Below, piece after piece: positions 1,173 to 9,602 of a DNA stretch of 64,000 bases (its first letter is position 1; each line of letters begins with the position of its first letter). The stretch covers positions 1-64,000 of IMG/VR virus record IMGVR_UViG_3300037010_001227; one strand, given 5' to 3'. The notes beneath the pieces are model-generated. The model ran no database searches and was not told the origin of the DNA. It saw only the letters and a program-made list of their open reading frames with translations. A program made the translations under genes and the position numbers.

Positions 1173-1682
1173 TTAAGCTCCAGATTTTTTTAATACTTCA
1201 GTATTTTTACTGGAAATAGAAATTTTTTGTTTAACTTCATTGGGAGTTTTCCAACCAAGTTTATGTTGTTTTCCTTTGTAAGCTAATGATAATTTCTTTT
1301 TACTGTCTTCTCTATGTTTGCGTCCAGGTTTATTTAATTTTGCTATTGATTGCTTTAATTTAGTTTCGACAGATCTTTTATTGCCTAAATTAGTATTAGC
1401 CAAAGGTTTACAAGTATATCCATTTTTATAAGAATCATAATTATTACTGGCACGGTGTTCAAAAAATACTAAATCTATTATATTATAGTATAGTAACACT
1501 TTAAAATTAAAATTATCTATTTCATGCTTATTAACAGAATTTTGTAATTTACTGAAACCAGGTTTATTATTTTTTAAATCATATTTATGCTGTCTCCAAT
1601 GATTTTTAATATCTTTAGATGACCCAATATAGACTTTATTAGTGTCTATATTTCGTATTATGTAAATATCACTTTTAAACAC
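1173..1682 (-). CDS. GIY-YIG homing endonuclease with NUMOD3-like repeats
   Basis: DIYIIRN...KVYIGSS, HWRQH, RSVETKLKQS / KHREDSKKKLS motifs; GTG start. Confidence 0.8.
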   Translation of the reverse strand: MFKSDIYIIRNIDTNKVYIGSSKDIKNHWRQHKYDLKNNKPGFSKLQNSVNKHEIDNFNFKVLLYYNIIDLVFFEHRASNNYDSYKNGYTCKPLANTNLGNKRSVETKLKQSIAKLNKPGRKHREDSKKKLSLAYKGKQHKLGWKTPNEVKQKISISSKNTEVLKKSGA

Positions 1683-2057
1683 TTAAACGTTATCCTTTAT
1701 AATTAGTTCCATGGCTCCAGTGATTAGTTTCATTGCTGGGTGGTAATAGTCACCATATTCGCAAGCTGCTAAATCTTCATGTATCTTCACCATTCTAGAT
1801 TCTTTATCATAAAAAATTAAGTTTTTGGCATCATTTTTGAAGTTCTTAACCAAAATCTCAGCTTGATTTTTCTGTATTTCAGGCGTTATTTCTAATCCAT
1901 TATCTGAAAGGTATTCCGCAGCACTACCAAGAAAGTTTTTATATGAGAATGATTCTATAACAGAACTTATTTTGTCATTCATAACTGCAGCCCAAGATTC
2001 TAATAAGTCTTGTTCAAAAAGTTTTAATACTTCGTCATCTATCTCTATTTTATCCAT
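1683..2057 (-). CDS. hypothetical protein (weak resemblance to neck/tail-completion proteins)
   Basis: 124-aa ORF coupled to upstream gene; C-terminal CEYGDYYHPAMKL. Confidence 0.6.
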   Translation of the reverse strand: MDKIEIDDEVLKLFEQDLLESWAAVMNDKISSVIESFSYKNFLGSAAEYLSDNGLEITPEIQKNQAEILVKNFKNDAKNLIFYDKESRMVKIHEDLAACEYGDYYHPAMKLITGAMELIIKDNV

Positions 2058-2491
2058 TAGTAACCTATTTGTTTAACAGTACTAAAATACATCCAAGAAT
2101 TATCATATAAATATTGTTCAATATTATGATTTGTGATATTATAAATTAACATTCCAATTGCAAAAATTTGAATAATTGGTTGTGGAACATCTTCAAAAGC
2201 AAGGCCATATTTACTAGCAGTTGCTCGTGCAATTTGGTTGTTCGTTTGTAAAGCAACAGTATATAGTTTAGCTTTTTCCTTTTCTGTGTATTTAGGAACA
2301 AGATACCGTTTATATGAAGGTAAATTATCGGCGTATGCTAATAAATAAAATTTCTCATCCTCTACTGGAATTATTAACTCTTCGTGTTGATGTGGAGCTT
2401 CTCCTACCCAAACATACTGTGGATTATTATAGTCTACAAAGAAATCGTATGGCACTATTTTATTACAAATAAGATTAGAAAACTCTGACAT
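2057..2491 (-). CDS. hypothetical protein
   Basis: Frame open to 2503; ATG at 2489-2491 is the likelier start. Confidence 0.65.
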   Translation of the reverse strand: MSEFSNLICNKIVPYDFFVDYNNPQYVWVGEAPHQHEELIIPVEDEKFYLLAYADNLPSYKRYLVPKYTEKEKAKLYTVALQTNNQIARATASKYGLAFEDVPQPIIQIFAIGMLIYNITNHNIEQYLYDNSWMYFSTVKQIGY

Positions 2492-2517
2492 ATAAACACC
2501 CAATCAAAATTAATTTT

Positions 2518-2919
2518 ATGAACGTAGATAGCTATAAATCCGCAGTAGCCAAAACTATTAATAACTTAATAGCCAGCTCAAAGAAAGAAACAACTGACGC
2601 CATTGATATGGGTGCCTTCATATCTGCTTGTAAAAAAGAATTTTTAACTTTAAAGATTCCTATTTTCAATATTAAACTATCTGAATATCGAGACAATGTT
2701 ATTGTAATAGAGCTTCCATTTTGCAAATCTTGTGAAATCGCCATTAATAGTGTTGAATTCGGTAAAGAAGATCAAGAAGTTTTACTCTATGTTGACAAGC
2801 ATATAGTTAGACGTATTCGGTTAAAAGCTTATGACGCTAAATATATGAATGAAGTAGCAATGGCCCTTGTAGATTATTTTAAACGCTACTTGTTGTTACA
2901 AAACAAATTTGAACGTTAA
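2518..2919 (+). CDS. hypothetical protein; only credible plus-strand gene in the window
   Basis: 133-aa ORF that overlaps no credible minus-strand gene and ends at a hairpin terminator. Confidence 0.65.
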   Translation: MNVDSYKSAVAKTINNLIASSKKETTDAIDMGAFISACKKEFLTLKIPIFNIKLSEYRDNVIVIELPFCKSCEIAINSVEFGKEDQEVLLYVDKHIVRRIRLKAYDAKYMNEVAMALVDYFKRYLLLQNKFER

Positions 2920-2920
2920 T

Positions 2921-2946
2921 AAAAAGCCCCTAAAACTAGGGGCTTT
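2921..2946. terminator. intrinsic terminator between convergent units; closes the radical SAM operon
   Basis: aaagcccct-aaaact-aggggcttt hairpin; U-tract on minus strand, weaker one on plus. Confidence 0.75.
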
Positions 2947-2964
2947 CGCTTTATAAAATGATTT

Positions 2965-3054
2965 TTATCTTCCAGTGCATGTTCCTGTGCAGGATGAACT
3001 ACAAGTATTACTACACGTAACATTAAGTATACTAATTAATCCTTTAAGGTATAC
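2965..3054 (-). other. start-less CXXX-repeat coding remnant or mini-peptide (VYLKGLISILNVT-CSNT-CSSS-CTGT-CTGR-stop)
   Basis: Manual translation; four Cys at exact 4-residue spacing, ends C-x-G-R-stop like the 7096-8802 protein; no in-frame ATG. Confidence 0.7.
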
Positions 3055-4171
3055 TTAATTTAAGTTCTTTTTCTTTAAGTTTACTTGCAAAATACATCTT
3101 TGCTATTGATATAGCATGAGTCCATCCGCACTGACGTTTTTCATTAACGTATTTTTCCTTATCTTCTACTTCATATATAGCTGCAACACAAGTAGGACAA
3201 GATGCTCTCAGTAAGCAAGTCTGGCACTCTTCTGGCCAAATACGTTTAAAAGTTGTTACCTCATTTAATAGTTTTGTATTTGTAATATTGATAGCATTGT
3301 CACTAAAGGTTCCTAGTTCCATACCAGGTTTATCCATAGTGCAGAATCTATTACAACCATATAATTTACCATCAATTCCTAAACAAGCCATATGAACGCA
3401 AGTTCCACACCACGAATCCTGACTAGAAGACAAAACTGGCATATAAGATTTAATATCTTCTAAAGAATTACCAAATTGAAGTAATTTGACAGTAGATTCT
3501 AGATTATTATTAACAATATAGTCGATAGTTTGTTTTAGTGGTTTAACGATGTCATAGGATAGATCTTTAGTTACAATATCTTCAAAGACTATGTTCCCAG
3601 CAATCTGAGTAAACCCTAATTTAATCAAATTTACCATACCTTCATAATAACTATTAAGATATGTCTCTACTGTGAAGGTTGCTTTTACACTTACATTCTC
3701 TTTGCCTAAAGTCTTAAATAACCAAGGTAAATATTCAATAGCATCTTCATATGAACCAGAACCATCTTTATAGATTCTATATTTATCGTGGTTTTCTTTT
3801 GTTCCATCTACAGAAACCCCAAGAGAAAAATCATTAGTTTTATATTTTTCGATTAAAGCTCTAACTTTAGGATTTTTTAATGTAGTTCCATTTGTAGTTG
3901 TAGATAGGAAAATATGCTTATTAAACTTATGCGACAACTGAAGAGCATATGAAAAAATCTCGTCACAAAGTTCAGGAAACAGAAAAGATTCTCCACCAAT
4001 CAAGTCAATAATAATATGCTTGTTTTCAATAGTTTTGAACTTAATATACATAAATGTCTTGATAGTATCAATGTCATTATGTTTCTGTTCTTTATGCTCA
4101 TAACAATAAGTGCAGTCTAAATTACAGCTTAAATTGGTAAGAATTTGAACTGTGGCTGGAATACCATTCAT
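3044..4171 (-). CDS. radical SAM/SPASM peptide maturase, CXXX-repeat-target type
   Basis: CNLDCTYC, IGGE, TTNG, SVDGTKENHDKYR..GSGSY, SPASM cysteines WCG...GCNRFC...CQTC...SCPTC...QC. Confidence 0.88.
   Translation of the reverse strand: MNGIPATVQILTNLSCNLDCTYCYEHKEQKHNDIDTIKTFMYIKFKTIENKHIIIDLIGGESFLFPELCDEIFSYALQLSHKFNKHIFLSTTTNGTTLKNPKVRALIEKYKTNDFSLGVSVDGTKENHDKYRIYKDGSGSYEDAIEYLPWLFKTLGKENVSVKATFTVETYLNSYYEGMVNLIKLGFTQIAGNIVFEDIVTKDLSYDIVKPLKQTIDYIVNNNLESTVKLLQFGNSLEDIKSYMPVLSSSQDSWCGTCVHMACLGIDGKLYGCNRFCTMDKPGMELGTFSDNAINITNTKLLNEVTTFKRIWPEECQTCLLRASCPTCVAAIYEVEDKEKYVNEKRQCGWTHAISIAKMYFASKLKEKELKLSIP
3053..3060 (-). promoter_or_regulatory. candidate late promoter AATTAAGT
   Basis: Inside the 3' end of the SPASM gene, upstream of the orphan CXXX remnant. 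Confidence 0.3.
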
Positions 4172-5589
4172 TATAACAGTCCCTTATTAAATCGTTTACA
4201 AATATCTAAATAATAATCAAAATCATTTCTGGTGGCAAATAAGTTTTCTTTACCCTCTGCAGCAAATACAATCGTATTTTTATATGTTGGATATAGCTTT
4301 TTCAATTCCATTTCAATTGCTATGACAGCAGTAATATCAAACGTTGCCTTGGTAACTTGTAAATCAATTTGAAAGGGGCACATAAAAATTCTAAATAGTT
4401 CTAAAAAGTCATTTGAAAAGTGCTCATTTGGAGAAATTGATTTTTTAATCTTTTTAGTTGTACTAGTAAGAAGTTCTTTTACTAAATCAAGATTTCTACT
4501 TTGAATAACTGCATTTTTAACTGATTTTGTATCACCATTTAAAGTATCAAAATTAACAATTAACGAAATACCATGATAATTTGTAAAAGCAACCAAAGAT
4601 TTAGTAATAGAATACCCATCAATAATTAAAGATAACTTAGCCATCGGTTGCTGAATTTTAACTGTCTGAATAATGCTTAAAAAATCATGTTCATCAATGA
4701 AATTATCCGAACAATCAAATACGATTTCTTTATATTTGGTTGCCATAGTTGCATTTAGTAATTTAGGATTAGATGCTATTAAGACATATTCTAAAACTAA
4801 TTTTGAGGGTTCCATAGGGTCTCTTCTGAAAGTGTCTACAAATTTTAAAAACTCTGTGTATTGTTCAAACGACATTGCAGTTCTGTATCCTACGCATCCT
4901 GGAAAACCTGGAACTGGTTCACATAGTTTCTCAACAGAGCCATCAGCATTTATAATCATATCTGAATAATCACATTGTTTTGTTGTATGTGTAAATGTCA
5001 ACCATTTAGTGCTTGTAGAATCTATAGTTTTTAAAGCTATTAATTCCTTTTTAATCCAATCTAATGAAATATCGTCAAATTTTTGAGTTACATCTAAAGA
5101 CAATCCAATGTTTGTATTAAATAGGATTCGCAATTGATGTAAGGTGTTACAAAGGTTTTTAGTATTTGGCAATACTATTGTAGACAAGGACAAACTGTTA
5201 ATAGTCTTTAATAACTGGGGCCATTCTTGGTTATCAGTTATAATTTTAGCATCTTCTACAGATTTCTCTCCAGTAATTCCTTGGAGACTAATAATGATAT
5301 GAATATTGTTGGCATTAATCCATGAAATAATCTCTGGTGTTAATAGTCTTCCATTAGTATTTATCGTCTTTTTGGAGTCTAGACTTAAGGAAGATATTAC
5401 CTTTTTTAACTTATCGAAGTCTAAAAAAGGTTCGCCACCAGTTATAACAGCATGTTCATAATATCCAAAAGTACTAATAGACTTTAAAATGGCTTCAATA
5501 TTCTCGCCTTTTTTAGAATCTTCTGTTTTTAAACAGAAAGAACACTGCATATTACAGTGTTCATTCAATTGTATTGTTAATATTGACAT
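4171..5589 (-). CDS. radical SAM protein with a second, motif-less radical SAM-like domain
   Basis: CNMQCSFC, TGGEP, NTNG in N-terminal half; C-terminal half aligns by eye to the same paralog family but lacks CxxxCxxC and GGE. Confidence 0.8.
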   Translation of the reverse strand: MSILTIQLNEHCNMQCSFCLKTEDSKKGENIEAILKSISTFGYYEHAVITGGEPFLDFDKLKKVISSLSLDSKKTINTNGRLLTPEIISWINANNIHIIISLQGITGEKSVEDAKIITDNQEWPQLLKTINSLSLSTIVLPNTKNLCNTLHQLRILFNTNIGLSLDVTQKFDDISLDWIKKELIALKTIDSTSTKWLTFTHTTKQCDYSDMIINADGSVEKLCEPVPGFPGCVGYRTAMSFEQYTEFLKFVDTFRRDPMEPSKLVLEYVLIASNPKLLNATMATKYKEIVFDCSDNFIDEHDFLSIIQTVKIQQPMAKLSLIIDGYSITKSLVAFTNYHGISLIVNFDTLNGDTKSVKNAVIQSRNLDLVKELLTSTTKKIKKSISPNEHFSNDFLELFRIFMCPFQIDLQVTKATFDITAVIAIEMELKKLYPTYKNTIVFAAEGKENLFATRNDFDYYLDICKRFNKGLL

Positions 5590-6263
5590 TATTTACCTGA
5601 AAGAATTTCAGCTCTCTTAGCAAAATAATCGGCCTGTAAAGCTCGTATTCTGGCTTTTTCAGCAATAATAGTAGCTGGAGTATTAGAGTTATTAATATTT
5701 CCTACTGTTAACATAGTTTTTAAATCTTCACCATATTTGTTGCAGATATTTACATCATTAAGAACTAATAGCTGAATGATTTCTGTTAAATAATCAACTT
5801 GAGCTTCTAATGTGGCAATAGACGAATAAGGATCTATTTTATAGGTAATAGTTTCAAATTTTATATCTTGTTTTTTACACTTAAAATCAAACTCTGGTAT
5901 TGTCTTAAGATAGGTAAGAAAATTAGAACATGAGTCAAAACCATGAGGTCCACAATCTAATGTTTCTGCCGTGCCACAATAAATAAACACAAAGATATCA
6001 GAACCTACTCGTAAAATAGTAGCAATATGCATATCATTTAGAGTTTTATCACTCCAAGGGAATGTACGATAGGTTTTATTTGACTCATTATAATGTAAAA
6101 AGACGCCATCAAAAGATTCTTTTAGTGGAGAGCAGTCAAAAGTATATGGTAACGTAGTTTTATAGTGATTAATCACTATAGTAGTATCATTTACTATACT
6201 TACAGAAATTACTCCAGTGTCTGTTAAATAATCAGAATTGGTAACTTTAACTAGTTTTATCAT
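5589..6263 (-). CDS. accessory protein of the radical SAM cassette
   Basis: 224 aa, coupled to neighbours; Cys cluster YCGTAETLDCGPHGFDSC and helical C-terminus. Confidence 0.7.
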   Translation of the reverse strand: MIKLVKVTNSDYLTDTGVISVSIVNDTTIVINHYKTTLPYTFDCSPLKESFDGVFLHYNESNKTYRTFPWSDKTLNDMHIATILRVGSDIFVFIYCGTAETLDCGPHGFDSCSNFLTYLKTIPEFDFKCKKQDIKFETITYKIDPYSSIATLEAQVDYLTEIIQLLVLNDVNICNKYGEDLKTMLTVGNINNSNTPATIIAEKARIRALQADYFAKRAEILSGK

Positions 6264-7089
6264 TATCTTCTTCCAAGTGAATAATTTGCATTTCCTGTTT
6301 AAAATTGTCTATTGTATCTATAAAATAATTAAGCGTTTCCATACTATCAAAACAAACCGCCTCACACTAAATCTCAACAACCATTCCAGCCCTTGACAGG
6401 TCGGTAAGGATAAGGTCTGAAAAGTAAATTAAAACATCGTTGATTACATTCTTTGTGGGCAAGTAAAAACTTTACTGACTTAAATACAGAATAAGGTACT
6501 AGTTTTTGTAATTCTGCTTTTATAAATTCTACATCAGCGGGTTTAAATTTTTTCGTGGAATCTAATGTAAGCTGAAAGGTGGCAGATGGAAACAATAAAG
6601 ACAAATCTTTAAAAGATTCTGTAAAAGTTATAGAAGCAAATACTACTTTCATAAGTTCTACTTGATCTAAATGCCGTATATGATCTATCAGAGAAAGATT
6701 TTGTGTGAGATTAATAGCATTTAATACGGATTTTTCACCTTGTAAAACATCTCTAAAACCTATGGAAAATTTTATTTTATTGTAATTAAAATAATTTACT
6801 AGTTCATTTGTTAGTAAACTACCATTTGTATACACAGACAACATCATAGTTTTTGAATGTTCTCTTACATATGTTATAGCGGGAATAAAAATTCTAAGTC
6901 TTGTAAAGGTTCTCCGCCAGTAAACGATATTACTGTATATAGATGATGTCCAAAGATGTCTTTAAACTTTTCTAACCTATCACTAGTAGATAACCTGTCT
7001 TTTCGCTCTAAAAATTCGCGTCTAGAACAAAAAGAACAGTTCATATTACATAAAAACCTAGTAAAAACAAAAAGATCGTAAACTTTCAT
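6247..7089 (-). pseudogene. radical SAM paralog broken by at least two frameshifts and one in-frame TAG
   Basis: CNMNCSFC and GGEP in 6874-7089; frame switch at a T5 run near 6890 into IPAITYVREHSKTMMLSVYTNG; second switch near 6420; TAG at 6367-6369; tail ends 6247. Confidence 0.75.
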
Positions 7090-7095
7090 AAGTTA

Positions 7096-8802
7096 TTAGC
7101 GACCTTTGCAGCCACTAGCACAATCTGCTGTGCAAGATGCAGAACAAGTTCCTGTGCAAGTTCCTTCACAACCACCTGTGCAAGTTCCTGTACAACCACC
7201 TGTGCAAGTTCCTGTGCAAGTACTAAAACAAGTTCCTGTGCAAGATGTCTGACAACCACCAGTACAGGTTGAAGAACAAGTTCCTTCACAAGTTCCTGTG
7301 CAATTTGCTGTGCAATGTCCAGTGCAAGAATTTAAACATCCTCCAGTACAAGATGTAATACAACTACCTACACAAGTATTATTACAACTACCTTTACATG
7401 TAGATAAACAAGACCAAGAACAACTACCACCACAAGTATAGAAATCGGGCGGTTGACCACCTAAAGTAACAGCATTAACATTTGTTATTTGAGAACCATC
7501 ACCAGCAAATGAGGGGGCAATGAATCTAGTGGAAGAAGCCAAGGAAACAGGATGTGTTTCATCAGCAGCTCTTCTTGATATAATAGAATCTACATCAGAC
7601 GTTCCAGAACCAAAGCTGATTTCACCACTGTATGAGATAGAAATTCTACTAAAAATATCACCGGGAACATTAGTAACCAAGGCGTCTTTGTGTAAAGGAC
7701 CTACAAAGTGGACACTAGCTGGATCTGTAACAATTAATGTGCCAGCTACTAAATTATCACCGTCTCTATTAATTTTACGATTTAACTGACTCTGAACAGG
7801 ACTTGTTACACCAGATAAAAGATTCAACTCGTCTAAATTGGTATTCATTGTAACAACTACTTTGTTAGAGTCTATACCTAAAACTCTATTAGCTGTTAAT
7901 TTATTTAACAGTAAATCAGATGTATTACTTAAAGCAATAGAGCCTGCTGTATGAGTAACTGAACCAGTCAACTGTGCAGAAGCTAAAGGAGCTTTTAAAT
8001 CTAATTGGCCTTGAATAGGAGATGTTACATTGTGAACATAAGAAAGTTCAGTAGATGTGGTTGAAGAGCTTGTTAATTTTTTATTGTTGTCTAAATAAAC
8101 AGCAGTTGAAGCAGTTAATGAAGAAACAATAAAATTATTAGATAGTGTAAGGTTGTTTGCAGCTGTTAAACCAGTTAAGTGAGCATCCAGTAATGGAGCC
8201 TTTAAGTCTAATTGACTCTGTAAAGTTATTCCAGTTGACAAATCAGATAATTGATTGATTTGATTTGTTGATACTGCGGCGCACATAATTTTGGAGCCGG
8301 TTGGATCCGAAATTAAAACCTTGTTTGTATCCAAGCCGGTTAGAGTAAATGCACCGTTACCAATAGTAACGGCAGCAGTAAAGTTTGCTGGTCCTTCTAC
8401 AGTAACATCCCCAAGAAAATCTACAGGCTTAGTAAAGTCTACGTTGTTATTAAAATATGATAGTCCAGTGAACGTAGTATTACCACTAAAAATATTATTA
8501 CCACTGAAGTTATTAGGAGCAGCAGACAGAGCAAAGTCTGACATTGTAGTGCCGTCATGACTAAAATAGAGTCTCCAAGCATTTACATTAGTATCCCAAT
8601 CACATTTAATATGTGGATTATAATTTACACCGACATTGTTTGATACCTGGAACACCAAATACTTTGGACTGTATCCTACTCCGTGTCCATTTTGTTCTCC
8701 ATCGGGGGCTCCATTAACAGCTGTTAACGGAGTTCCAATAACAAAGTCATTGTCAGGTGTTGTTGTGTATCTAAATTGACTTAATCTTAACTCACCACTC
8801 AT
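7096..8802 (-). CDS. fibre-like virion protein with C-terminal 28x Cys-X-X-X repeat (candidate radical SAM substrate)
   Basis: Fibre-type repeats (LQSQLDLKAPL, STTELSYVHNVTSPIQGQLDLKAPL, LSGVTSPVQSQLN), TLGGQPPDFY linker, then 112-aa CXXX tract. Confidence 0.8.
   Translation of the reverse strand: MSGELRLSQFRYTTTPDNDFVIGTPLTAVNGAPDGEQNGHGVGYSPKYLVFQVSNNVGVNYNPHIKCDWDTNVNAWRLYFSHDGTTMSDFALSAAPNNFSGNNIFSGNTTFTGLSYFNNNVDFTKPVDFLGDVTVEGPANFTAAVTIGNGAFTLTGLDTNKVLISDPTGSKIMCAAVSTNQINQLSDLSTGITLQSQLDLKAPLLDAHLTGLTAANNLTLSNNFIVSSLTASTAVYLDNNKKLTSSSTTSTELSYVHNVTSPIQGQLDLKAPLASAQLTGSVTHTAGSIALSNTSDLLLNKLTANRVLGIDSNKVVVTMNTNLDELNLLSGVTSPVQSQLNRKINRDGDNLVAGTLIVTDPASVHFVGPLHKDALVTNVPGDIFSRISISYSGEISFGSGTSDVDSIISRRAADETHPVSLASSTRFIAPSFAGDGSQITNVNAVTLGGQPPDFYTCGGSCSWSCLSTCKGSCNNTCVGSCITSCTGGCLNSCTGHCTANCTGTCEGTCSSTCTGGCQTSCTGTCFSTCTGTCTGGCTGTCTGGCEGTCTGTCSASCTADCASGCKGR
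7099..7434 (-). repeat. 12-nt/4-aa Cys-X-X-X coding repeat, 28 units
   Basis: Counted from CGGS to CKGR; commonest units CTGT and CTGG. Confidence 0.95.
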
Positions 8803-8820
8803 CGTATACCCTATAGTAAA

Positions 8821-8828
8821 ACTTAATT
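8821..8828 (-). promoter_or_regulatory. candidate late promoter AATTAAGT
   Basis: 18 nt upstream of the CXXX-fibre ATG. Confidence 0.5.
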
Positions 8829-8834
8829 GTAATC

Positions 8835-9602
8835 TTACGCGATAAAGAACTGTTGGCTTGAAGCATGGTTTGCCAGCTCTTCTCGTAAATTGGTTATCTC
8901 ATCTTTGGCTTGTGACAGCAGTTCCTGGGCATTTAAAGTTTGAGTCTCTCCAGTAGCACCAGCTATAGTTGAATATTTACCACGAACTAATCCTAGCATG
9001 TTCTTTGTAATAGCAAGGGCCATACGCTTTATCCAATAGGTTCCCCATTGATTAGATGTGGATATGGCTCCATCTTTAGACATAACGCCAAAGGCATTTT
9101 TAGAATACTCGATAATAACTGTCTGAGTGGCCTTAGGATAAGGAAATAGATAGAGTGTATTGTCAATAACTTTAAAAGTGATATCAAGACCTAAAGCTCG
9201 GTTTCTATTTTGTATATACTCATAGAATACAGCAAGATTAGCAGCACCATGAATAAAATTACCATAGCCAGCTCCTTGTAATCCTCCAAAACCACCACCG
9301 CCTCCCATAGCGAAACTAAAGATGTCTGTTGTTCCAGCCATACCGGCCATTATTTCGAAGGGCATAGCATAACAAACACTAGAGACAGTTCCTACTTCAG
9401 GAGGTAATGGAACTTCATTGTGCCCCTGAATAGCCATCGGTTGGTAGTAAGCTCTTTCTACTGCTCCAGTGGCAAGGTATTCATCCACGGCGGTGTTAAT
9501 AGCAGTATGAAGTTGAGCTTCATCTAACTCAACAGCAACAGTGGGCCAACCTAAATTAGTCAGGATGTAATTTTGAATGTCTTCTCGTTTGATTAAGCCC
9601 AT
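8835..9602 (-). CDS. neck protein, T4 gp13-like
   Basis: N-terminal IQNYILTNLGWPTVAVELDEAQL..AI..A matches the gp13 pattern; C-terminal GLVRGKY...LNAQELL. Confidence 0.8.
   Translation of the reverse strand: MGLIKREDIQNYILTNLGWPTVAVELDEAQLHTAINTAVDEYLATGAVERAYYQPMAIQGHNEVPLPPEVGTVSSVCYAMPFEIMAGMAGTTDIFSFAMGGGGGFGGLQGAGYGNFIHGAANLAVFYEYIQNRNRALGLDITFKVIDNTLYLFPYPKATQTVIIEYSKNAFGVMSKDGAISTSNQWGTYWIKRMALAITKNMLGLVRGKYSTIAGATGETQTLNAQELLSQAKDEITNLREELANHASSQQFFIA

What the first reader, a model, noticed from the sequence alone, without database searches (positions are those of the whole stretch)
2965..3060. Hidden second CXXX element: a start-less CSNT-CSSS-CTGT-CTGR remnant between the maturase stop and the terminator
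Seen: a frame not in the ORF track encodes four Cys at 4-residue spacing and ends C-x-G-R-stop, like the 568-aa protein (CKGR-stop), with similar codons (TGC ACA GGA AC.). It has no in-frame ATG; the ATG at 3021-3023 is one base out of frame. An 11-bp perfect inverted repeat (3022-3032 / 3049-3059) encloses the SPASM stop and an AAAGGA. Inference, three options: (1) the old 3' end of the fibre gene, orphaned when the radical SAM cassette entered by recombination within the CXXX repeats; (2) a mini precursor peptide with an ATA start or a 1-nt indel; (3) a +1 shift at CCT-TAA appending a CXXX tail to the enzyme. Option 3 is weakest, because the known +1 sites in SPP1 and Listeria phages are CCC-TAA.
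Basis: partly seen in the sequence, partly recalled or inferred. Interest (0 to 1): 0.75.

Follow-up and report, generated by a model that had tools for sequence, protein, structure and literature searches.

The report
Leftover end of a cysteine-repeat fibre gene
Between an enzyme gene and a terminator in an uncultured jumbo phage lies a 51-base leftover of the cysteine-repeat tail of a fibre-type gene; it most likely makes no protein and simply records a past rearrangement of this gene cluster.

Summary
On the minus strand, 3015-2965 reads CSNT-CSSS-CTGT-CTGR-stop. It has no in-frame ATG, GTG or TTG. An ATG at 3023-3021 is one base out of frame. An 11-bp perfect inverted repeat encloses the SPASM stop codon. 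The Cys pattern is not chance: 0.09 matches are expected per 64 kb. The sequence is identical in five other assemblies apart from one SNP, and none shows an indel.

Nine relatives' loci with the convergent downstream gene have only 28-44 nt, a terminator hairpin, where the window has 124 nt. Real CXXX tails in relatives lie in ORFs with starts. They open with a conserved C-S-W-[ST]-C motif and end in R or K. The remnant keeps only the end. None of 120 listed SPASM homologues carries a CXXX tail.

One relative (L026) has a complete 601-aa CXXX-tailed gene directly after its SPASM gene. The locus is otherwise in decay: one radical SAM gene is frameshifted and another is a partial duplication.

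Best reading: an untranslated fossil of a CXXX-tail 3' end, most simply left by deletion of a second tailed gene. No cassette-less allele was found. The mini-precursor and +1-frameshift readings are not supported. Interest is low.

The parts
2965..3015 (-). CXXX-tail remnant: 16 codons (CSNT CSSS CTGT CTGR) plus TAA. There is no in-frame canonical start.
   Evidence: pattern expected 0.09 per 64 kb; TIGR04114, E 0.0025. Identical in other assemblies.
3016..3043 (-). 28-nt spacer between the SPASM stop and the first Cys codon. The out-of-frame ATG lies at 3023-3021, in-frame ATA at 3030-3028 and in-frame ATT at 3036-3034. The SD-like AAAGGA lies at 3045-3040 and overlaps the stop.
   Evidence: SD spacing in this phage is 4-13 nt before ATG.
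3022..3059 (.). 11-bp perfect inverted repeat with a 16-nt loop. The loop holds the SPASM stop and AAAGGA. It forms a weak AT-rich hairpin.
   Evidence: dG is -9.8 kcal/mol on the minus strand and -11.9 on the plus strand. There are 33 such repeats in the genome against about 2 by chance.
2923..2946 (.). GC-rich hairpin with T-runs on both strands: a bidirectional intrinsic-terminator-like site between the cassette and the convergent gene.
   Evidence: I5. dG is -16.9 and -15.7 kcal/mol, z about -4. Relatives have an equivalent hairpin in the same gap. The simple consensus scan did not call it.
3044..4171 (-). Radical SAM/SPASM peptide maturase (375 aa), called 'B' here.
   Evidence: Best NCBIfam match is TIGR04115, the CXXX-repeat-target maturase, at 157 bits, below the 350 cut-off. 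Homologues are 51-63% identical.
4171..5589 (-). 472-aa radical SAM protein: one full small-rSAM unit (aa 1-257) plus a second partial copy (aa about 300-472).
   Evidence: two separate alignments to single-unit relatives.
5589..6263 (-). 224-aa cassette protein of unknown function, called 'C' here. In five relative lineages it follows the SPASM gene.
   Evidence: 22-39% identity to the 205-238-aa neighbours in relatives.
6374..7089 (-). Small radical SAM gene next to the fibre, split by a 1-nt frameshift into 71-aa and 157-aa ORFs.
   Evidence: A strain in run X4 has one extra base behind 6885. That gives a colinear 238-aa protein aligning to relatives' 262-276-aa enzymes.
7096..8802 (-). 568-aa fibre-like protein with a C-terminal tail of about 27 CXXX repeats (about 7099-7434), ending CKGR-stop.
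   Evidence: (TIGR04114). It lies next to a T4 gp13-like gene.
2518..2919 (+). Convergent 133-aa gene ('D') used as the synteny anchor.
   Evidence: (homologues 41-83% identical).

Best explanation
The 51 bases are a non-coding fossil. They are the last four repeats and the stop codon of a CXXX-repeat tail of a fibre-type gene, stranded between the SPASM maturase gene and the shared terminator.

The simplest history is as follows. An ancestor carried a second CXXX-tailed gene directly downstream of the maturase, as relative L026 does today. A deletion removed that gene's body and most of its tail. It left the ribosome-binding region with the first few bases, the extreme 3' end, and the terminator. 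The remnant has no usable start and lacks the conserved opening motif of real tails. So it is most likely neither translated nor a substrate.

Shown here:
- the sequence is real and stable across assemblies;
- it is CXXX-tail-like;
- it is extra relative to all relatives;
- a full tailed gene occupies this slot in one relative;
- the locus carries other rearrangement and decay marks.

Inferred:
- the deletion itself and its end points;
- the absence of translation.
For: 1. The remnant is tail-like and not chance.
- Pattern expectation is 0.09 per 64 kb.
- The only NCBIfam match is TIGR04114.
- Codon-level matches to fibre repeats are 16/17, 15/16 and 14/15.
- The C-x-G-R-stop ending fits: the fibre tails of the window and close relatives end in R or K, except one (L019_c).

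2. It is extra DNA. In nine relatives' loci the gap between the last cassette gene and convergent gene D is 28-44 nt and holds only a hairpin. The window has 124 nt.

3. It is only the end of a tail. In 12 of 13 phage CXXX tails the array opens with C-S-W-[ST]-C (once C-T-W-T-C), usually after a Y-x-C context. The remnant has none of this.

4. There is precedent for the slot.
- In L026 the SPASM gene is followed after 44 nt by a 601-aa protein with 26 CXXX repeats ending CTYR-stop.
- More distant maturases in L040 and L045 also have their CXXX ORF directly downstream.
- In other relatives large non-CXXX proteins occupy the D-adjacent slot, so the slot is variable.

5. The locus is in flux.
- The fibre-adjacent radical SAM gene is frameshifted here but intact in another strain.
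- The 472-aa gene is a unit plus a partial duplicate.
- Gene order differs from five relative lineages.

6. There is no route to translation.
- No in-frame ATG, GTG or TTG.
- No indel in six assemblies.
- No CXXX-tailed SPASM homologue among 120 listed.
Against: - No close relative (between 63% and 100% SPASM identity) was available, so the full-length allele in this lineage was not seen. The deletion is inferred from a 53%-identical relative whose downstream context differs.
- All four Cys codons and the stop are intact. This fits a very recent event but also fits selection.
- AAAGGA lies 9 nt before an in-frame ATA, the spacing this phage uses before ATG. Weak initiation is therefore not excluded.
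- The 11-bp inverted repeat is non-random and unexplained.
- No RNA or proteomic data could be examined.
Confidence: 0.7

Rival explanations
1. Reader's option 1 as written. The remnant is the original 3' end of the present 568-aa fibre gene. It was displaced when the radical SAM cassette, with a new tail end, was inserted by recombination within the CXXX repeats.
For: - The remnant shares repeat codons with the fibre tail: 16/17, 15/16 and 14/15. With the L025 SNP the last match becomes 15/15.
- Both end C-x-G-R-stop.
- The repeats would be a good substrate for recombination.
- The remnant sits in front of the terminator, as a gene end would.
Against: - All relatives with a CXXX fibre already have the radical SAM genes next to it, and no cassette-less allele was found.
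- The nucleotide similarity is not specific to this fibre: 26/28 to an unrelated CXXX gene in L037.
- A crossover inside the repeats should leave the remnant joined to cassette DNA at a repeat. Instead a 28-nt non-repeat spacer with a hairpin separates it from the SPASM stop.
Confidence: 0.13
2. Reader's option 2. The stretch is a very short, essentially leaderless CXXX peptide of 21-23 aa, initiated at a non-canonical codon: ATA at 3030-3028 or ATT at 3036-3034. The adjacent maturases would modify it.
For: - AAAGGA lies 9 nt upstream of the in-frame ATA, the spacing seen before ATG in this phage.
- The frame is open with all four Cys intact.
- It lies directly after a CXXX-type maturase, where more distant systems place their targets (L040 and L045).
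- A real 69-aa CXXX ORF with only four regular repeats exists in L036.
Against: - There is no ATG, GTG or TTG, and ATA is a very poor initiator (established knowledge).
- The ATA lies inside the 3' arm of the hairpin.
- The conserved opening motif C-S-W-[ST]-C, present even in the 69-aa ORF, is absent.
- There is no indel variant in six assemblies.
- No relative has anything in this gap.
- The one SNP seen is non-synonymous.
Confidence: 0.07
3. Reader's option 3. A programmed +1 frameshift at CCT-TAA appends KGLISILNVT plus the CXXX tail to a fraction of the SPASM enzyme.
For: - The CXXX frame is the +1 frame of the SPASM gene, open from just before its stop.
- A stop codon in the A site is a known +1 stimulator (established knowledge of prfB).
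Against: - None of 120 listed SPASM homologues has a CXXX tail, and their C-termini end within about 10 residues of this one.
- There is no SD-like element upstream of CCT.
- CCT to CTT re-pairing is poor.
- The hairpin's 5' arm lies 3-13 nt upstream of the stop and would be melted by the terminating ribosome, so it cannot act as a stimulator (inference).
Confidence: 0.02
4. The stretch is a chance Cys-periodic sequence in AT-rich intergenic DNA.
For: A few other four-TGY period-12 matches exist elsewhere in the genome, at 49424, 85964 and 113157.
Against: - Expectation is 0.09 per 64 kb.
- The position is right after a CXXX maturase.
- There is a TIGR04114 match.
- The codons and terminal motif are shared with real tails.
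Confidence: 0.01

Closest known systems
CXXX-repeat radical SAM target proteins (NCBIfam TIGR04114; Pfam PF27846) with their maturase family TIGR04115
   Same: - It has the same four-residue Cys period and Thr/Ser/Gly-rich X positions.
- It lies next to a radical SAM/SPASM enzyme whose best family match is TIGR04115.
   Different: - It has only four repeats, no start codon and no preceding protein body.
- It lacks the opening C-S-W-[ST]-C motif.
- Its score is just under the family cut-off (18.2 against 20).
- The enzyme is well below the equivalog cut-off (157 against 350), so it is a relative, not a member.
Second CXXX-tailed gene downstream of the fused rSAM-SPASM gene in relative L026 (metagenomic contig, 53% SPASM identity)
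   Same: - It has the same position: directly after the maturase stop.
- It is on the same strand and has the same kind of tail ending in R-stop.
   Different: - L026 has a complete 601-aa gene with 26 repeats, followed by another radical SAM gene rather than by the terminator and gene D.
- There is no detectable nucleotide homology in the intergenic DNA.
Gene remnants left by deletion in variable tail-fibre (host-range) modules of phages (established knowledge)
   Same: - It is a short in-phase fragment of a gene end.
- It sits in a variable fibre region, next to other decayed genes and near a GIY-YIG homing endonuclease gene.
   Different: The fragment belongs to a peptide-modification target. 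A residual function as substrate or decoy is therefore conceivable, though unsupported.
Programmed +1 frameshift sites (prfB; Listeria phage A118/PSA-type capsid and tail genes)
   Same: It has a Pro codon followed by a stop codon, with an open +1 frame.
   Different: - There is no upstream SD-like stimulator.
- The codon is CCT rather than CCC.
- No extension is conserved in homologues.

Membership tests
CXXX-repeat radical SAM target (TIGR04114 / PF27846) | Tandem Cys-Xaa-Xaa-Xaa repeats recognised by the family model | tested here: inconclusive
   The 29-aa translation scores 18.2 bits, E 0.0025, against a cut-off of 20. The fibre tail scores 39.7 bits.
CXXX-repeat radical SAM target (TIGR04114 / PF27846) | Encoded next to a radical SAM/SPASM maturase of the CXXX-target type | tested here: met
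   It lies 28 nt after the stop of the 375-aa SPASM gene, whose best NCBIfam match is TIGR04115.
CXXX-repeat radical SAM target (TIGR04114 / PF27846) | Part of a translatable ORF with a start codon | tested here: not met
   There is no in-frame ATG, GTG or TTG between the upstream stop (3057-3055) and the first Cys. No indel variant occurs in six assemblies.
Phage fibre CXXX tails (this clade, defined here from relatives) | Array opens with the conserved C-S-W-[ST]-C motif after a protein body | tested here: not met
   The motif is present in 12 of 13 tails surveyed and absent from the remnant.
Phage fibre CXXX tails (this clade, defined here from relatives) | Tail ends in a basic residue followed by stop | tested here: met
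   The remnant ends CTGR-stop. Relatives end in R or K, with one exception.
Programmed +1 ribosomal frameshift site | Extension conserved in homologues | tested here: not met
   None of the 120 listed SPASM homologues has a run of four or more period-4 Cys. C-termini are aligned.
Programmed +1 ribosomal frameshift site | Slippery P-site codon with good +1 re-pairing and a stimulator (upstream SD-like element or downstream structure) | tested here: not met
   The sequence reads AGT ATA CCT TAA. There is no SD-like element upstream. The only structure has its 5' arm upstream of the stop.
Programmed +1 ribosomal frameshift site | Two protein products observed | not testable with these tools
   No proteomic or ribosome-profiling data exist for this uncultured phage.
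Gene remnant (pseudogene fragment) | Homologous to part of a functional gene, lacks the rest, and is absent from the same site in relatives | tested here: met
Gene remnant (pseudogene fragment) | Full-length gene at the orthologous site in a close relative | tested here: inconclusive
   It is seen only in a 53%-identical relative with a different downstream context (L026). No closer relatives could be retrieved.
Intrinsic terminator (2923-2946) | GC-rich hairpin followed by a T-run | tested here: met
   An 11-bp stem with dG -16.9 kcal/mol is followed by TTTTTA. Equivalent hairpins occur in relatives. The consensus scan did not list it.

The most novel reading that the evidence does not exclude
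The stretch is not dead. A 21-23-aa, nearly leaderless CXXX peptide is made at a low level from the in-frame ATA (AAAGGA lies 9 nt upstream). The hairpin may gate this. The neighbouring radical SAM enzymes would cross-link the peptide, giving a free phage-encoded modified peptide, or a decoy or primer substrate for the fibre maturases. A related variant is that the fragment serves as a silent donor cassette for recombinational variation of the fibre's tail.
Probability: 0.06. Interest if true: 0.7.

Novelty: new member of a known kind. Interest (0 to 1): 0.25.

Why it matters
By itself it matters little. It is a gene fragment that should not be annotated as a coding sequence, as a frameshift site or as a precursor peptide.

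Its value is as a marker. It shows that the cysteine-repeat fibre and radical SAM module of these uncultured jumbo phages is reshuffled by deletion and duplication. Whole tailed genes can be gained and lost next to the maturases.

The surrounding system is more interesting than the remnant. It consists of a structural fibre whose C-terminal CXXX array is presumably cross-linked by two or three radical SAM enzymes. It is conserved from these phages to SPN3US-like and Erwinia jumbo phages. It seems barely treated in the open literature: four full-text searches found nothing relevant.

Tried and rejected
- Megablast of 2500-9000 against GenBank phages: no match.
- Single-protein scan of IMG/VR with the SPASM protein: nothing. 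The alignment-based scan gave 30 loci, all at or below 43% identity.
- Exact-pattern scans for the tail-terminator junction in metagenome contigs and for the hairpin junction in viral contigs: no matches outside the withheld own records.
- Attempt to fetch the DNA of the closest relative by gene D (83% identity, a JGI sample): no DNA from the look-up, and the metagenome scan found nothing. Its gene calls suggest a 238-aa gene abuts D with a 29-nt gap. I could not confirm that this gene is the 'C' homologue.
- Laying public runs: only assembled contigs were available, not raw reads. Rare indel variants cannot be excluded, and no RNA run was found. The loose ends at 2954 and 3281 were judged to be short spurious matches, because the depth in the bin between them does not rise.
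- Alignment of the window's post-SPASM DNA with L026's: no homology. L026's intergenic fold is not better than shuffles.
- tblastn of the L026 second-fibre body against the whole 213-kb genome: only the CXXX tail matches, so the lost gene's body has not moved elsewhere.
- Naming the donor of the remnant from nucleotide similarity: rejected, because an unrelated CXXX gene matches as well as the resident fibre.
- Chance origin: rejected.
- Sequencing or assembly error creating the missing start: rejected.

Full report
**Setting**

The window is the first 64 kb of a 213-kb IMG/VR virus record. CheckV estimates it as 95% complete. GC content is about 31-37%. Public runs that hold it are microbial-mat and sediment metagenomes.

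All genes discussed lie on the minus strand, in this order:
- a T4 gp13-like gene (8835-9602);
- a 568-aa fibre-like protein, F1 (7096-8802), whose last ~110 residues are about 27 Cys-Xaa-Xaa-Xaa repeats ending CKGR-stop;
- a small radical SAM gene split into 71-aa and 157-aa ORFs (7089-6374);
- a 224-aa protein, 'C' (5589-6263);
- a 472-aa radical SAM protein (4171-5589);
- a 375-aa radical SAM/SPASM protein, 'B' (3044-4171).

Downstream of B lie the finding, a GC-rich hairpin (2923-2946) and a convergent 133-aa gene, 'D' (2518-2919, plus strand).

B's best NCBIfam match is TIGR04115, the maturase family for CXXX-repeat targets. It scores 157 bits, far below the 350-bit equivalog cut-off. PapB-type ranthipeptide maturases come next. 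F1 matches the CXXX-repeat target model TIGR04114.

**The observation**

- Cys codons lie at 3015, 3003, 2991 and 2979, followed by ACT GGA AGA TAA.
- The open frame starts after an in-frame TAA at 3057-3055 and has no ATG, GTG or TTG.
- The ATG at 3023-3021 is one base out of frame.
- The 11-bp perfect inverted repeat at 3022-3032 / 3049-3059 has a loop holding B's stop (3046-3044) and AAAGGA.
- The CXXX frame is B's +1 frame.

The Cys periodicity is not chance. Dinucleotide-preserving shuffles give 0.09 matches per 64 kb. The 29-aa translation hits only TIGR04114 in NCBIfam (E 0.0025, 18.2 bits against a 20-bit cut-off). The inverted repeat is also non-random: 33 such repeats occur in the genome against 0-3 in Markov controls. 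As RNA it is weak, at -9.8 kcal/mol.

**Not an assembly artefact**

The exact SPASM protein occurs on six contigs from different samples.
- Four of the five other assemblies carry the identical 221 nt around the finding.
- The fifth differs by a single substitution, AGT to AAT. That is Ser to Asn at an X position of the CXXX frame.
- Contigs of four public runs laid on 1600-7500 show no inserted or deleted letters in 2900-3100. This includes a diverged strain, X4, that differs by up to 9% in patches elsewhere.

So the '1-nt indel' version of option 2 has no support. Only contigs, not raw reads, could be examined.

**What relatives have at this site**

Homologues of B at 51-63% identity and of D at 41-83% gave context. 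Three arrangements occur:
- fibre - small rSAM - SPASM - C - terminator - convergent D (L010, L011, L013/L016; L019 has the same gene order, but its contig holds no D);
- fibre - C - fused rSAM::SPASM - terminator - D (L028 and a 243-kb contig), with a variant in L030;
- C - fused rSAM::SPASM - a second CXXX-tailed gene of 601 aa - small rSAM - 205-aa protein (L026/L027 and three more contigs).

In further relatives (L061-L063) a large unrelated protein without CXXX repeats is the gene convergent with D.

In all nine loci where the junction with D could be read, the gap is 28-44 nt and holds only a terminator hairpin. The window has 124 nt. The remnant and its 28-nt spacer are therefore extra DNA specific to this lineage.

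**What real tails look like**

I surveyed the close relatives and 30 IMG/VR loci.
- CXXX arrays always lie in ORFs with a start codon, from 69 to 601 aa. The two exceptions are a 100-codon start-less frame in L038 and a 57-codon start-less four-Cys frame in L030 that I judged to be chance.
- In 12 of 13 phage tails of this clade the array opens with C-S-W-[ST]-C (once C-T-W-T-C), usually after a Y-x-C context.
- The fibre tails of the window and close relatives end in Arg or Lys before the stop, apart from L019_c.
- The remnant has the ending (CTGR-stop) but not the opening.

At the nucleotide level the remnant matches F1 repeat units at 16/17, 15/16 and 14/15. It matches an unrelated CXXX gene in L037 just as well, at 26/28. 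The similarity therefore reflects shared repeat and codon usage, and it does not identify F1 as the donor.

**Can it be translated?**

- No SPASM homologue among the 120 listed carries a run of period-4 Cys. Their C-termini stop within about ten residues of this one.
- There is no SD-like element upstream of CCT-TAA.
- The hairpin's 5' arm lies inside the footprint of a ribosome at the stop, so it cannot act as a downstream stimulator (inference).
- In this phage SD-like motifs lie 4-13 nt before ATG. AAAGGA is 16 nt before the out-of-frame ATG, but 9 nt before an in-frame ATA (3030-3028).

This last point is the only feature that keeps a low-level mini-peptide conceivable. It also fits a relic of a former initiation region, for example an ATG that decayed to ATA after an in-frame deletion. 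Alternatively, the ATG at 3023 may have been the old start and the deletion was out of frame. I cannot tell these apart.

**A locus in flux**

- The fibre-adjacent radical SAM gene is broken by a 1-nt frameshift in this strain. Strain X4 has one extra base behind 6885, which yields a colinear 238-aa enzyme aligning with relatives' 262-276-aa proteins.
- The 472-aa gene is one full small-rSAM unit followed by a second, N-terminally truncated copy.
- Gene order differs from that of five relative lineages.
- A GIY-YIG/NUMOD3 homing-endonuclease-like gene lies 1.3 kb away.

A stranded gene end is what one expects in such a region.

**Conclusion**

The remnant is best read as an untranslated fossil of a CXXX-tail 3' end (confidence about 0.7).

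Its most economical origin is deletion of a second CXXX-tailed gene that once followed the maturase, as in L026. I hold that sub-claim at roughly even odds. The only precedent is a 53%-identical relative with a different downstream context. No homology survives in the intergenic DNA, and no body of such a gene exists elsewhere in the genome.

Options 2 and 3 are unsupported.

The inverted repeat remains unexplained. It could be a relic of the lost gene's initiation region, or a weak back-up terminator for plus-strand read-through, since a T-rich run follows it on the plus strand.

**Comparison with what is known**

CXXX-repeat targets and their maturases are curated families: TIGR04114, TIGR04115, TIGR04117 and PF27846. 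Gene fragments in phage fibre modules are commonplace. The remnant is a new instance of a known kind, and interest is low.

Four full-text searches found no paper on CXXX-tailed phage fibres and their radical SAM enzymes. The parent system may therefore deserve its own look.

Noticed in passing
window 6374-7089 (-): The radical SAM gene next to the fibre is split by a 1-nt frameshift into 71-aa and 157-aa ORFs in this strain and in identical assemblies. A related strain (run X4) has one extra base behind 6885, which gives an intact colinear 238-aa enzyme.
   Followed up: yes
window 4171-5589 (-): The 472-aa radical SAM protein consists of one complete small-rSAM unit (aa 1-257) plus a second copy lacking its N-terminal Fe-S motif (aa about 300-472). 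In relatives the small rSAM is instead fused to the SPASM enzyme (634 aa; P0007, L028).
   Followed up: partly
window 7099-7434 (-) and loci L010, L011, L013, L019, L026, L031-L036: Phage fibre-type proteins from 69 to 601 aa carry C-terminal CXXX arrays. The arrays open with a conserved C-S-W-[ST]-C motif and mostly end in R or K. They always lie beside one small radical SAM and one SPASM enzyme. The module reaches SPN3US-like Salmonella and Erwinia jumbo phages at 36-37% identity. Four literature searches found nothing on it.
   Followed up: partly
243-kb ENA contig (gene calls only): The CXXX-tailed fibre homologue there is 791 aa. It has weak Hint/intein-type Pfam hits in addition to the CXXX repeat, so it may be an intein-containing fibre.
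   Followed up: no
window 1173-1682 (-): A 169-aa GIY-YIG/NUMOD3 homing-endonuclease-like gene lies 1.3 kb from the remnant. It could promote local rearrangement.
   Followed up: no
window 2916-3023 (-): A 35-codon ORF starts at the out-of-frame ATG, reads through the remnant in another frame and through the terminator hairpin, and ends inside the 3' end of gene D. It is probably not a gene.
   Followed up: no
whole genome G000: There are 33 perfect inverted repeats of at least 11 bp with loops of 3-20 nt, against 0-3 in Markov controls. Many are GC-rich with T-runs (terminators). The one at 3022-3059 is unusually AT-rich with a large loop.
   Followed up: partly
loci L061-L063, L028, L030, L010 (gap before gene D): The gene convergent with D differs between relatives: the 205-251-aa cassette protein, a fused rSAM::SPASM, a 467-aa radical SAM protein, or large unrelated proteins of at least 394-512 aa. 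This is a hypervariable slot bounded by a conserved terminator hairpin.
   Followed up: partly
L038 3721-4023 (+): A 100-codon open frame rich in CXXX repeats has no ATG, GTG or TTG before the repeats. It lies upstream of a 28%-identical maturase. It may be another broken or unconventionally started CXXX gene.
   Followed up: no
G000 about 146.6-147.1 kb: A further radical SAM gene, distantly related to the small cassette enzyme at 25-33% identity, lies far from the fibre locus.
   Followed up: no
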